Position numbers and translations under genes: made by a program
Shown here: in pieces, positions 56,801 to 59,800 of the stretch
How positions within the stretch are numbered: the stretch's first letter is position 1
Layout: each line of letters starts with the position of its first letter
From: Laetmonice hystrix
Taxonomy: Eukaryota
Assembly: GCA_965235115.1 (NCBI GenBank)
Contig: OZ249439.1
Span: 16,988,001 to 17,052,000 of the forward strand
Length of the DNA: 64,000 bases
Direction of reading: 5' to 3'
Notes under the pieces: model-generated
Databases searched by the model: none
Seen by the model: only the letters and a program-made list of their open reading frames with translations
What the model was told of the DNA's origin: nothing

Positions 56801-59800
56801 CAATAACATACATGACATGACAGAAATCTAGCCTGATCTAAATATTAGTAACACTACAAGTTAAAACATACAAGACAAGCAATGGCTATGTCTGGCAGCA
56901 ATCTCAGGGCTTTCAAATTGTTTTGGATAGGCGGGGATTAGGCTAATGTAGTAGGCATTGTCCCATTTTTTTGGTTAGCCTCAAGTGCAATCAACATCTC
57001 GAATGAACCTGTTCAGTTGCTAACTGTGCTTTATGCCATGTTGAGCACATGACTGCTTGCGATTTTGGCATCATGAAAAAAAACATCAAAATTTTTTTGT
57101 TGGCTGTGTTAAAGTAACCAGTGCAGGTTGCCCTTGTAAACAGGGATTCCACTGGCTGCAGGTTTAATTTGAAAGCCCTGAATCTGAGAGAGATATAAGG
57201 CCTTATGAGTGCTGTTAATCTGACAACTGTTTACCTATGTTATGGGGACCAAAAGGTCCCCTGTGATGAGCTGCCTGTGAAGTACACCAGGTCCAGGAAC
57301 CCAACGACGACCATACCAGCTAGAGTGGATCTTGAAAAGGCTTGCTCACCACTAAAAAACTTGCTACTTTATAACTGCCTTTGCAAGCTTTGTCTCCCTT
57401 GACTCAATTGTTAAGGTGACCTATTAAAATAGAGGGGAAAACTGGGAAAATTTCGTGTTGGTCATGAGCCTGAAATGGAGTAGTTAGTTGTGGGATGAGT
57501 GGCCAGGGCTTCCGTAAGTGTGCATATCAGTGTAAATAGACGTTCTAGCAAAATAGGCAAAGAAATAATCGGAATGGTAGGGTTGTCCAACAACTGTTTA
57601 GGTTGTCTCGGACAACCGCCGTATGATACACAGCGTATGCCCGCCGTCATCAGCCCAGGCGCCCTCCCACCCATTGGACAGGCCCCCCAGTAGTAGAAAA
57701 AATTCGGGACTTAGCCAAACTGGCCGTAATTAAGGGTTGACTGCTTTACTGAGGTGGCCGTTAAGCGGGTTGCAGCTGTATTGTATATACTGATTTTCTG
57801 TAATTTTTCCACGTGGGGATGAAAGATCTTGAGGCGACCCATGAAGCATTAACAGACATTGGTACAAAAATCTTATTTGTATCTAAATAATGGTGTCGGA
57901 CCTGAATCATGCCAGAGATACTTGAACATGACTGTCTGAATTTGGGGTCTTTTTTTCCCCCGGGCAAATTGGCCACCATCTTAGTTCAGGCTGTGGTAGT
58001 GGGATATTATCAAAACTGTTTTTCTGTGTTGACCTCAAATTGACTTAAAATGACTAAAAAAGGCTGTATCTCATGAAATTGGTTCATTTTTTAAGTTTAG
58101 ATATTTTTTCAAAACCCAGTTCCTGATGGTGGCTTGAACGCTATATGTATTGCTTTGTCTCCAGGACCAAGCGGGAACGGCTCGATAGTGGCGGGGAAGG
58201 AGAGTAAGTAAAATCGAGCTGGTTGCCCGCTTTCTACATCATTGGTGTAGGGGTTATTAGAAAATTCTGTCCCCCCTCCTGTGAACTGAACTCCACCACT
58301 ACAGCAGTTGAAAATTAGACCTGGACTAAAGGTTGTCTCGGAAATAAGAAAACCTGAATTTAACATGTGAAAACCCAGAAGTAATGTTGGGATTCTCTAG
58401 ACTTCAGTTTTACTACTTTGAGTTTTGATTGGCAAGATTATTAAGAAGACCTCTAAAAAGTTCTTTTATAATTAAATTTCACTTTCAGATCATTGTTTAT
58501 ATTCGAATTTTATATAAATTTTGTGGAGTATCTGTTAATTATTTGATGCTGGCGTGAGCCTGATTATATACCACCTGTACTATGTATTTTTCTCCAGAGG
58601 GGGCCTCAACTCCTTAGATGAGTAAGTTGTGTGTATCGGGACTCACCAACCCATTATCTTGTGGCTATTTTAATGTTCATCCTTGATCACTTATATCATG
58701 CATCACATATAATAAGTATGTATACTGATATCTTATATAACGGGTCAATACAGAAGCCAGCCATGAAAATAGATATGAACCCCCTTAAAGGTTTTTCCTC
58801 TGCCTTGCAGAGATGCTAGGATTTGTTTTGAGAAATTTGTTGATTGCTCCTAATAAGGGCCTTGATTCTGACTGGTAAATAAACATGTCGCCTTGTGTGT
58901 CTCTCCAGAGGGGGCATCAACTCCTTAGACTTAGATGAGTAAGTTGTTTAGGGACTTGTGAACCCATTATCTCCAAACTATCTTAATTTTCATCTTTCAA
59001 TACAGAAACTGCAGAAATAAGCCTTCGTCATGCCAAAAGTTCATCAGGAACCATTCCCTTCAAATTTAATAAAAGAAACCTATTTCTCATAGAATTTCTG
59101 GTTAAGAATGTTTATCATAGAGAGCAGCTAAATTATGCTTTCAACTGTTTTAGTGAAATAGATTTTGTGGCATAATGAGGAAAATGAAGAGGATGGAAAA
59201 TGAGCCTTAGTTATTTCCTAGTGCCCAAAGTCAATTCTTCATAGTACTACCGAGTGAATTGGCTAAAACAGGGACATACTTACTGGTAGTCTGGCATGAC
59301 GTGGGCTGATGGTGGTCCTGTACGATTTGAGGTTAAGGACATTTTAAGGCACCTCTGTAAAGTACCGCCAGTTGGAAAGAGCAAGATGGTAATATAAGTC
59401 TTAATGAGCTCAGTGTAATTACTTTTGCCCAACGTGAAATAATCATTCTCCAACTTTTACAGACAACTGTAAGCCAGTGTCTTCCTTCGGAATCTTCTGA
59501 TAACTGTTTTACTAACACCCTGACTGTGTATGTAAATTGCAACTGATGTCTTAACTGAATAACGATGTCTTATATAAAGAATAAATTTCTAGGGTCACAT
59601 ACTGAACAACAGTTCCTGTCATTGTCAATTTTCAGAATATAGCAGGAGTGCTGCCACACTTCTCTTCTTTCATTGCACCTTAGAATTGTGTTACTTTCCA
59701 ATCTTAATCTACACACCAAATAGTGCAAGACTGCTAATATTCAGTTATTAATCACAAGCCTAGCTTGTACGTGGGGAAACCAATCCAGTAGAGCCCAGCG

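What the first reader, a model, noticed from the sequence alone, without database searches (positions are those of the whole stretch)
58151..58938. Array of three frame-preserving cassette exons that would tune the ISWI AutoN autoinhibitory element
Seen: intron 3 (56305-60754, phase 2, GA|T) is by far the longest ISWI intron here. It contains three segments of 39, 24 and 30 nt, each bounded by TCTCCAG and GA|GTAAGT, each a multiple of 3, phase 2-2 and stop-free. Any combination keeps the frame, giving up to 8 isoforms. All insert between KLISAG and [16 protein letters not shown]. Established: that RHR basic motif and the following acidic helix form AutoN, which mimics the H4 tail and inhibits the ATPase. 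Inference: a combinatorial, possibly tissue-specific splicing switch on nucleosome-remodeller autoinhibition. I know of no description of it.
Basis: partly seen in the sequence, partly recalled or inferred. Interest (0 to 1): 0.85.

Follow-up and report, generated by a model that had tools for sequence, protein, structure and literature searches.

The report
Candidate mini-exons in ISWI linker
Three tiny in-frame segments with near-perfect splice signals sit in one long intron of a worm's ISWI chromatin-remodelling gene and would lengthen the flexible linker just before its self-inhibiting motif. They look like real optional exons, but I could get no RNA evidence and found them in no other species.

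Summary
In the 4,450-nt intron between the ppHSA/AT-hook exon (56120-56304) and the AutoN/AcidicN exon (60755-60855) of a single-copy ISWI/SMARCA5 orthologue lie three segments:
- A, 58165-58203, 39 nt
- B, 58598-58621, 24 nt
- C, 58909-58938, 30 nt

Each has TCTCCAG|…GA|GTAAGT, is phase 2-2 and stop-free, and all 8 combinations stay in frame.

For real exons:
- B and C are a local duplication. The exon body is 23/24 identical with an in-frame 6-nt indel; the flank matches 56/77.
- A is a GC- and CpG-rich island in a CpG-depleted intron.
- All three are unique in the genome.
- Strict consensus pairs are rare elsewhere in the window.

Against:
- A looser splice-site null expects about 0.7 such candidates per intron.
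- Eight other animals' orthologous introns lack them.
- No RNA test was possible. The run that is probably RNA gave nothing on this gene's conserved exons, so it says nothing either way.

Other lineages show independent in-frame insertions at the same junction: a conserved 42/48-nt island in two related invertebrates and one fish gene model.

AutoN itself is unchanged; only the naturally length-variable linker grows. My verdict is that these are probably lineage-specific cassette exons (about 0.5). The "autoinhibition switch" is untested speculation.

The parts
55829..55912 (+). ISWI exon 2 (…[10 protein letters not shown]), phase 0 into exon 3
   Evidence: Open frame with flanking AG/GTAAGT. 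The junction matches the spliced relative P0079, …[15 protein letters not shown].
56120..56304 (+). ISWI exon 3: ppHSA motif ([16 protein letters not shown]) and AT-hook (KPGRPRIK). Ends …KLISAG + GA|, donor GTAAGT.
   Evidence: Matches SNF2h 8v4y_W residues 86-139 at E 3.4e-17 and Pfam DBINO weakly. The same exon end and phase ('…GE' followed by YV or a stop) appears in dozens of animals.
58165..58203 (+). Candidate cassette A: 39 nt, phase 2-2, encodes [13 protein letters not shown]. Acceptor ttgctttgtctccag, donor GA|gtaagt.
   Evidence: GC 0.64 and CpG o/e 1.24, against 0.385 and 0.38 for the intron; it is in the top ~1% of 39-nt windows on both measures. Unique in the 627-Mb genome.
58598..58621 (+). 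Candidate cassette B: 24 nt, phase 2-2, encodes EGGLNSLD. Acceptor tatttttctccag, donor GA|gtaagt.
   Evidence: It is a paralogue of C: the exon is 23/24 identical while the downstream flank matches 56/77.
58909..58938 (+). Candidate cassette C: 30 nt, phase 2-2, encodes [10 protein letters not shown]. Acceptor tgtgtctctccag, donor GA|gtaagt.
   Evidence: It differs from B by one conservative change (CTC to ATC, L to I) and an in-frame 6-nt indel. The B/C unit occurs only here in the genome.
58583..59000 (+). Local tandem duplication carrying B and C, roughly -16 to +60-75 around each exon. Shared downstream intronic blocks: GGGACT, AACCCATTATCT, CTAT.TTAAT.TTCATC.
60755..60855 (+). ISWI exon 4: AutoN (HRHRR) plus AcidicN ([10 protein letters not shown]). 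Its first base T completes the split codon GA|T = D.
   Evidence: The exon is 73-85% identical at protein level in seven other animals, 61% in an eighth (L015). Motif names follow PMC5305211.
56305..60754 (+). Intron 3, 4,450 nt. Includes a high-copy repeat at about 57670-57831.
   Evidence: depth about 1000 against about 50-60. No Rfam family matches.

Best explanation
A, B and C are genuine, lineage-specific short cassette exons of the worm's single ISWI gene, included in at least some mRNAs. A arose independently; B and C arose by local duplication of one microexon.

Inclusion adds 8-31 hydrophilic, net-acidic residues to the disordered, poorly conserved linker. That linker joins the ppHSA/AT-hook clamp to the AutoN-AcidicN autoinhibitory module, and both motifs stay intact.

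The most likely biochemical consequence (inferred, not shown) is a modest change in how AutoN-AcidicN is tethered to ATPase lobe 2: a longer tether, plus extra acidic residues and Ser-x-x-Asp/Glu sites next to the basic patch. I do not expect an on/off switch.
For: Shown:
- Acceptors and donors are as good as or better than those of the gene's constitutive exons.
- All three are multiples of 3, open in the required frame, and every combination is in frame.
- Only 7 strict consensus pairs occur in 128 kb, and 3 are these.
- Eight orthologous introns (about 12 kb) give no 12-90-nt in-frame candidate as high as the cassettes (best 11.7, against 13.8-14.2 here).
- B and C keep both splice sites, the frame and 23/24 exon bases, with an in-frame 6-nt indel. 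Their flanks have diverged to 56/77 (Fisher p 0.02, binomial p 0.005).
- A is a CpG-rich island (o/e 1.24) in a CpG-depleted intron (o/e 0.38).
- None is a repeat-family member.
- The encoded peptides are linker-like (G/S/D/E/K/R/L, no C/W/F/Y), unlike most null candidates.

Precedent at the same junction:
- A 42/48-nt in-frame, stop-free AG…GTAAAT segment is the only conserved island of this intron between two related invertebrates (L016 and L013).
- Fish model XP_019956772.1 carries +6 residues there.

Linker length is naturally variable across animals.
Against: - No RNA evidence for inclusion or skipping. The four runs laid were three DNA runs and one probable RNA run, and the latter gave nothing on exons 3 and 4.
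- No orthologous intron examined contains the cassettes, and there is no nucleotide homology. No transcript-derived or annotated relative has a similar insert.
- Under a looser splice-site null, about 0.7 comparable in-frame candidates are expected by chance in an intron this long.
- B and C are not independent observations.
- The selection signal on B/C rests on 24 nt.
Confidence: 0.5

Rival explanations
1. Pseudo-exons: exon-like intronic sequence, arisen by chance or decayed or never fixed, that the spliceosome ignores or uses only at noise level. There is no protein isoform of consequence.
For: - Zero RNA support and zero cross-species conservation.
- The rough PWM null gives about 19 comparable in-frame candidates in 128 kb, or about 0.7 per intron of this length.
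- Long introns are known to hold many decoy exons (general knowledge).
- The ISWI linker works without them in all other animals examined.
Against: - Three within 800 nt, all in the one usable phase.
- The B/C exon body and both splice sites are preserved while flanks diverged.
- A retains CpGs in a CpG-depleted intron.
- Strict consensus pairs are very rare elsewhere.
- The peptides are compositionally linker-like.
Confidence: 0.3
2. Constitutive small exons. Some or all of A, B and C are always included in this species, so the real protein simply has a longer linker (up to +31 residues) and 'intron 3' is really four introns. There would be no regulation by splicing.
For: - Splice sites are at least as strong as those of the constitutive exons.
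- Insect-like ISWIs carry constitutive linkers 14-17 residues longer than the common form, so a long linker is compatible with function.
Against: - Exons of 24-39 nt are below the size that exon definition handles efficiently and are usually alternative (general knowledge).
- Tandem duplicate exons are more often used alternatively.
- No relative has the insert.
Confidence: 0.15
3. B and C are mutually exclusive duplicated exons, each supplying one version of an LNSLD-type peptide.
For: They are adjacent homologous exons with the same phase and near-identical sequence. This is the usual origin of mutually exclusive pairs.
Against: - Including both keeps the frame.
- The 287-nt intron between them is too long for steric exclusion.
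- Only weak, probably chance, inverted repeats flank them.
- So no enforcing mechanism is visible.
Confidence: 0.1

Closest known systems
ISWI N-terminal region architecture (ppHSA, AT-hook, AutoN, AcidicN) as defined for Drosophila ISWI (Clapier & Cairns 2012; Ludwigsen et al. 2017, PMC5305211)
   Same: The worm gene has all four motifs in the same order. It has the conserved phase-2 intron between the AT-hook exon and the AutoN exon.
   Different: No splice variant in this linker is described in that work or in the papers I could search. Here three candidate cassettes would lengthen the AT-hook to AutoN linker.
SNF2L/SMARCA1 '+13' isoform: alternative exon in a vertebrate ISWI that inactivates the ATPase (from my own knowledge, not checked here)
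   Same: Alternative in-frame exon in an ISWI-family remodeller, proposed to modulate enzyme activity.
   Different: That exon lies inside the ATPase domain and abolishes activity. These candidates lie in a disordered N-terminal linker and leave all motifs intact.
Frame-preserving microexons and short cassette exons in disordered protein linkers of bilaterians, including the SRRM4/eMIC-dependent neural programme
   Same: Size of 24-39 nt, multiples of 3, strong donors, location in a surface or disordered segment next to an interaction motif. Cassette A has a UGC about 12-14 nt upstream of its acceptor.
   Different: B and C lack a proximal UGC. There is no tissue data and no deep conservation, whereas many neural microexons are ancient.
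Independent inserts at the same ISWI junction: fish model XP_019956772.1 (+ELSLLDS), Coryphaenoides KAG7258428.1 (+10 residues), and the conserved 42/48-nt island in L016/L013
   Same: Same intron, same phase, short hydrophilic insert immediately before (D/N/R)-HRHRR.
   Different: No sequence homology to the worm cassettes. The fish insert is absent from a cyprinid orthologue. None has RNA evidence that I verified.

Membership tests
ISWI (SMARCA5/SMARCA1/Iswi) subfamily of SNF2 ATPases | N-terminal ppHSA motif followed by AT-hook, AutoN (RHRR/RHRK) and AcidicN | tested here: met
   [16 protein letters not shown] … KPGRPRIK … [16 protein letters not shown]. Exon 3 aligns to SNF2h 8v4y_W residues 86-139, E 3.4e-17. 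Motif definitions from PMC5305211.
ISWI (SMARCA5/SMARCA1/Iswi) subfamily of SNF2 ATPases | SNF2-type ATPase core (GLGKT, DEAH box) | tested here: met
   Exons at 61500-63318 hit Pfam SNF2-rel_dom, E 1.6e-19 to 2.4e-05 (the weakest exon, 24.0 bits, is just under Pfam's 24.9 cut-off). They contain LADEM/GLGKT and [12 protein letters not shown].
ISWI (SMARCA5/SMARCA1/Iswi) subfamily of SNF2 ATPases | C-terminal HAND-SANT-SLIDE module | not tested
   This part lies beyond the window's end at 64000. I did not fetch the rest of the gene.
Alternatively spliced cassette exon | Functional 3' and 5' splice sites flanking the segment | tested here: met
   Sequence level only: TCTCCAG| and |GTAAGT for all three. 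Scores equal or exceed those of the constitutive exons.
Alternatively spliced cassette exon | Frame preserved with and without the exon | tested here: met
   39, 24 and 30 nt, phase 2-2. All 8 combinations are stop-free.
Alternatively spliced cassette exon | Transcripts showing both inclusion and skipping | tested here: inconclusive
   No run on record as RNA was found. The one probable RNA run (X4) laid nothing on exons 3 and 4, probably because conserved contigs are filtered.
Alternatively spliced cassette exon | Conservation of exon, frame and splice sites in relatives | tested here: not met
   Absent from the orthologous intron of eight other animals (L004, L006, L009, L011/12, L015, L016/13, L017), with no nucleotide homology. 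None of these is a close relative: exon 3 identity is at most 77%. Within the genome, the B/C paralogue comparison does suggest constraint.
SRRM4/eMIC-dependent neural microexon | Length of about 27 nt or less (up to 51) with a UGC element between the pyrimidine tract and the 3' splice site; neural inclusion | tested here: inconclusive
   A has UGC at about -14 to -12. B and C have none within 30 nt. No tissue data.
Mutually exclusive tandem-duplicated exons | Homologous adjacent exons plus a mechanism forbidding joint inclusion (frame shift, steric block, competing RNA pairing) | tested here: not met
   Homology is present. But joint inclusion is in frame, the spacing is 287 nt, and only weak inverted repeats are present.
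Recursive-splicing exon | Joining to the upstream exon regenerates a GTRAGT donor at the junction | tested here: not met
   The cassettes begin GACCAA or AGGGGG. The junctions …GGGGA|GACC and …GGGGA|AGGG create no GT.

The most novel reading that the evidence does not exclude
The intron just upstream of AutoN is a recurrent evolutionary hotspot for short alternative exons in animal ISWI genes: three here, a conserved one in another invertebrate lineage, and one in a fish model. In this worm, combinatorial inclusion would set the tether length and local charge next to AutoN-AcidicN. That would give tissue- or stage-specific grades of autoinhibition and H4-tail dependence of a nucleosome remodeller.
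Probability: 0.12. Interest if true: 0.7.

Novelty: new variant of a known kind. Interest (0 to 1): 0.4.

Why it matters
ISWI remodellers space nucleosomes in all eukaryotes. Their autoinhibition by the N-terminal AutoN-AcidicN module is a textbook regulatory mechanism that has been studied only by mutagenesis.

A natural set of splice isoforms varying the segment next to AutoN would be a ready-made allelic series. It could test how tether length and flanking charge tune autoinhibition. It would also be the first hint that cells regulate this step by splicing.

If the cassettes are merely tolerated linker insertions, or decoys, the finding is ordinary: one more lineage-specific short-exon prediction in a disordered region.

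Tried and rejected
1. RNA evidence. Two run searches (whole intron, then an exon-dense stretch) returned only one sample's four runs, none recorded as RNA. The single read-laying run showed X1-X3 are DNA. X4 gave only two short intronic pieces and nothing on the certainly expressed exons 3 and 4. X4 holds 0.31 of the words of 61176-62700, close to the 0.30 I calculated by hand for spliced exons alone. It is therefore probably RNA whose conserved mRNA contig was filtered out. This is no evidence for or against inclusion.

2. Annotated isoforms. A search with a fish full-length ISWI listed only vertebrates (the best 120 of 536). I could not reference an invertebrate full-length seed. An attempt to scaffold the worm exons on P0071 gave a garbled alignment and was dropped. 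A profile of exon-3 fragments found spliced invertebrate fragments (for example Solemya velum, ticks, insect-like), none with a similar insert.

3. I first took P0216 (Pimephales) to carry the fish insert, with transcript-length contigs as support. It does not; only XP_019956772.1 does.

4. Origin of A by duplication of the 3' end of exon 3: the peptides look vaguely alike, but DNA similarity does not exceed shuffled controls beyond the donor consensus.

5. Exonised transposon: rejected, because the A and B/C regions are single-copy.

6. Non-coding RNA in the intron: no Rfam match.

7. Recursive splicing and enforced mutual exclusion: features not met (see membership tests).

8. Heterozygous sites: 8 SNPs and 1 indel in 4.85 kb, none in the cassettes. 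Only about 0.3 were expected there, so this is uninformative.

Full report
**What is there**

On the + strand from about 55.8 kb to the window's end lies a single-copy ISWI/SMARCA5-type gene.
- Exon 3 (56120-56304) encodes [22 protein letters not shown]…[21 protein letters not shown]. It aligns to residues 86-139 of human SNF2h (PDB 8v4y) at E 3.4e-17.
- Later exons carry LADEM/GLGKT and [12 protein letters not shown] and hit Pfam SNF2-rel_dom.
- The genome (627 Mb, 35 contigs) has one copy of this exon.
I did not verify that.

Exon 3 ends GA|GTAAGT. Exon 4 (60755-60855) starts T|CAC CGT CAT CGA AGG, giving [16 protein letters not shown]. In the nomenclature of Ludwigsen et al. 2017 (PMC5305211) this is AutoN followed by AcidicN. 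The intron is 4,450 nt; the other introns between exons 2 and 11 are 131-464 nt.

**The three segments**

| Cassette | Coordinates | Length | Peptide |
|---|---|---|---|
| A | 58165-58203 | 39 nt | [13 protein letters not shown] |
| B | 58598-58621 | 24 nt | EGGLNSLD |
| C | 58909-58938 | 30 nt | [10 protein letters not shown] |

- Each follows TCTCCAG and precedes GTAAGT, ends in GA, and is phase 2-2. In B and C only the needed frame is open.
- All eight combinations read through. My first run had B off by one base.
- In every isoform the residue before HRHRR stays D, so AutoN and AcidicN are untouched.
- Three DNA runs of the sequenced sample confirm the sequence.

**Is it more than chance?**

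It depends on the null, and I report both.
- Strict null (at least 8 of 10 pyrimidines + CAG, paired with GTAAGT 9-90 nt away): only 7 pairs in 128 kb of both strands. Three are the cassettes and one lies inside a real exon. None of the remaining three is a multiple of 3.
- Rough PWM null of my own: the cassettes score 13.8-14.2, and about 19 other in-frame, stop-free candidates in the window score as high. Some may be real exons of other genes. This gives about 0.7 expected per 4.45 kb. The same scan on about 12 kb of orthologous introns from other animals gave no 12-90-nt candidate above 11.7.
- So splice signals alone are suggestive, not decisive.

**Independent signs of constraint**

- B and C are a local duplication spanning about -16 to +60-75. 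It occurs nowhere else in the genome.
- Their exon bodies match at 23/24 positions. The one change is conservative (CTC to ATC, Leu to Ile), and there is an in-frame 6-nt indel.
- The downstream flank matches 56/77 with 14 gap bases (Fisher p 0.02; binomial p 0.005). Both copies keep AG and GTAAGT.
- Cassette A has GC 0.64 and CpG o/e 1.24, in an intron of GC 0.385 and CpG o/e 0.38. Only one other spot in the intron, inside a repeat, is as CpG-dense. A is single-copy.
- The encoded peptides are hydrophilic and linker-like. Most null candidates encode C/W/F/Y-rich strings.

**RNA**

I could not test expression.
- Both run searches returned four runs of one sample, none recorded as RNA.
- Laid on 56050-60900, X1-X3 behave as DNA. 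X4 gave two short intronic pieces and nothing on exons 3 and 4.
- X4 held 0.31 of the sampled words of the exon-dense stretch 61176-62700. That is almost exactly the 0.30 I calculated by hand if only spliced exons are present. X4 is therefore probably RNA.
- The tool states that contigs resembling human DNA are dropped, and an ISWI mRNA contig would qualify.
- The silence over the cassettes is therefore uninformative.

**Relatives**

- Exon-level fragments from dozens of animals end in '…GE' followed by a stop or YV. The intron position and phase are therefore ancient.
- I fetched the orthologous intron from eight other animals. Their exon 3 is 61-77% identical, so none is a close relative.

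| Locus | Intron length |
|---|---|
| L004 | 1.5 kb |
| L006 | 0.55 kb |
| L009 (a cyprinid fish) | 1.6 kb |
| L011/L012 | about 1 kb |
| L015 | 0.4 kb |
| L016 (L013 reaches >3.7 kb without reaching exon 4) | 2.8 kb |
| L017 | about 0.1 kb |

- None contains the worm's cassettes, and there is no nucleotide homology.
- Spliced fragments of a bivalve, ticks and insect-like species show no similar insert.
- The cassettes are therefore lineage-specific at best.

**Inserts at the same junction elsewhere**

- In L016 and L013, the only blastn-detectable conserved island of the whole intron covers an in-frame, stop-free segment plus about 60 nt of downstream intron. The island is 117 nt at 73% identity.
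- The segment is bounded by TTTTGCAG| and |GTAAAT. It is 42 nt in L016 (11041-11082) and 48 nt in L013 (4277-4324), encoding DIHLASSSSASVGDR and DPHSTNSSSTSVTVGDR.
- Among 119 vertebrate ISWI clusters, 117 have the standard spacing. XP_019956772.1 has +6 residues (…SAG-ELSLLDS-NRHRR) and Coryphaenoides KAG7258428.1 has +10. The fish insert is not present in the cyprinid intron.
- None of these is homologous to the worm cassettes. Together they suggest this linker tolerates, and repeatedly acquires, short in-frame exons.

**How it would work**

- Per PMC5305211, ppHSA clamps the N-terminal region to ATPase lobe 2. AutoN and AcidicN act together, next to but not in the H4-tail pocket.
- The AT-hook is poorly conserved. 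Deleting ppHSA and the AT-hook changes ATPase by at most 1.8-fold and remodelling by 1.4-3.3-fold.
- The distance from SPLKMK to RHR is 21-27 residues in most animals and 40-43 in insect-like ISWIs.
- In the worm it would be 26 (skip), 34 (+B), 36 (+C), 39 (+A), and up to 57 (+ABC).
- The most likely effect of inclusion is therefore a modest change in tethering and local charge next to the basic patch. B and C add 2-3 acidic residues directly before D-HRHRR. A and B contain Ser-x-x-Glu/Asp, a CK2-type context. This is inference only.
- A strong, switch-like effect on autoinhibition is possible but not the default expectation.

**Verdict**

- Observation: confirmed.
- Most likely reading: real, lineage-specific cassette exons (about 0.5).
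- Rivals: unused pseudo-exons (about 0.3) or constitutive small exons (about 0.15).
I put it at about 0.12.
- I found no description in the searchable literature.
- Interest is moderate. A single RNA-seq junction count would settle the first question.

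Noticed in passing
L016:11041-11082 and L013:4277-4324: In another invertebrate lineage (metagenome-derived contigs, taxon unknown), the only conserved island of the orthologous ISWI intron is an in-frame 42/48-nt AG…GTAAAT segment. It encodes a Ser-rich insert just before HRHRR and is probably an independent cassette exon at the same site.
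   Followed up: partly
P0192 (XP_019956772.1) and P0193 (KAG7258428.1, Coryphaenoides rupestris): Two fish ISWI/SMARCA5 models carry +6 (ELSLLDS) and +10 residues at exactly this exon junction. 117 of 119 vertebrate clusters do not, and the cyprinid intron (L009) lacks the sequence.
   Followed up: partly
window 59463-59468: A 6-nt segment (ttttacag|ACAACT|gtaagc) has the best combined splice score in the intron. It is in frame and would replace D with EQL before HRHRR. It is too short to judge and may be chance.
   Followed up: no
window 57670-57831: High-copy repeat inside the intron: contig depth of about 365-1280 against about 35-60 around it in the three DNA runs. A CpG-dense patch lies beside it at 57597-57673.
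   Followed up: no
run X4, window 61176-62700 and 56050-60900: X4 is unlabelled, but its word share (0.31) matches spliced exons only. Yet no contig of it was laid on the conserved exons 3 and 4. This is a probable case of the human-similarity filter hiding an animal's own conserved mRNA.
   Followed up: partly
window 58297-58313 and 59139-59155: A 17-nt inverted repeat (88% complementary) brackets cassettes B and C. Probably chance, but it could loop them out together.
   Followed up: no
P0071 (891 aa): A database ISWI-like protein lacks one ATPase exon. Its C-terminal third is unrelated to HAND-SANT-SLIDE and ends in a linker-histone-like stretch. It looks like a chimeric gene model or an odd paralogue.
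   Followed up: no
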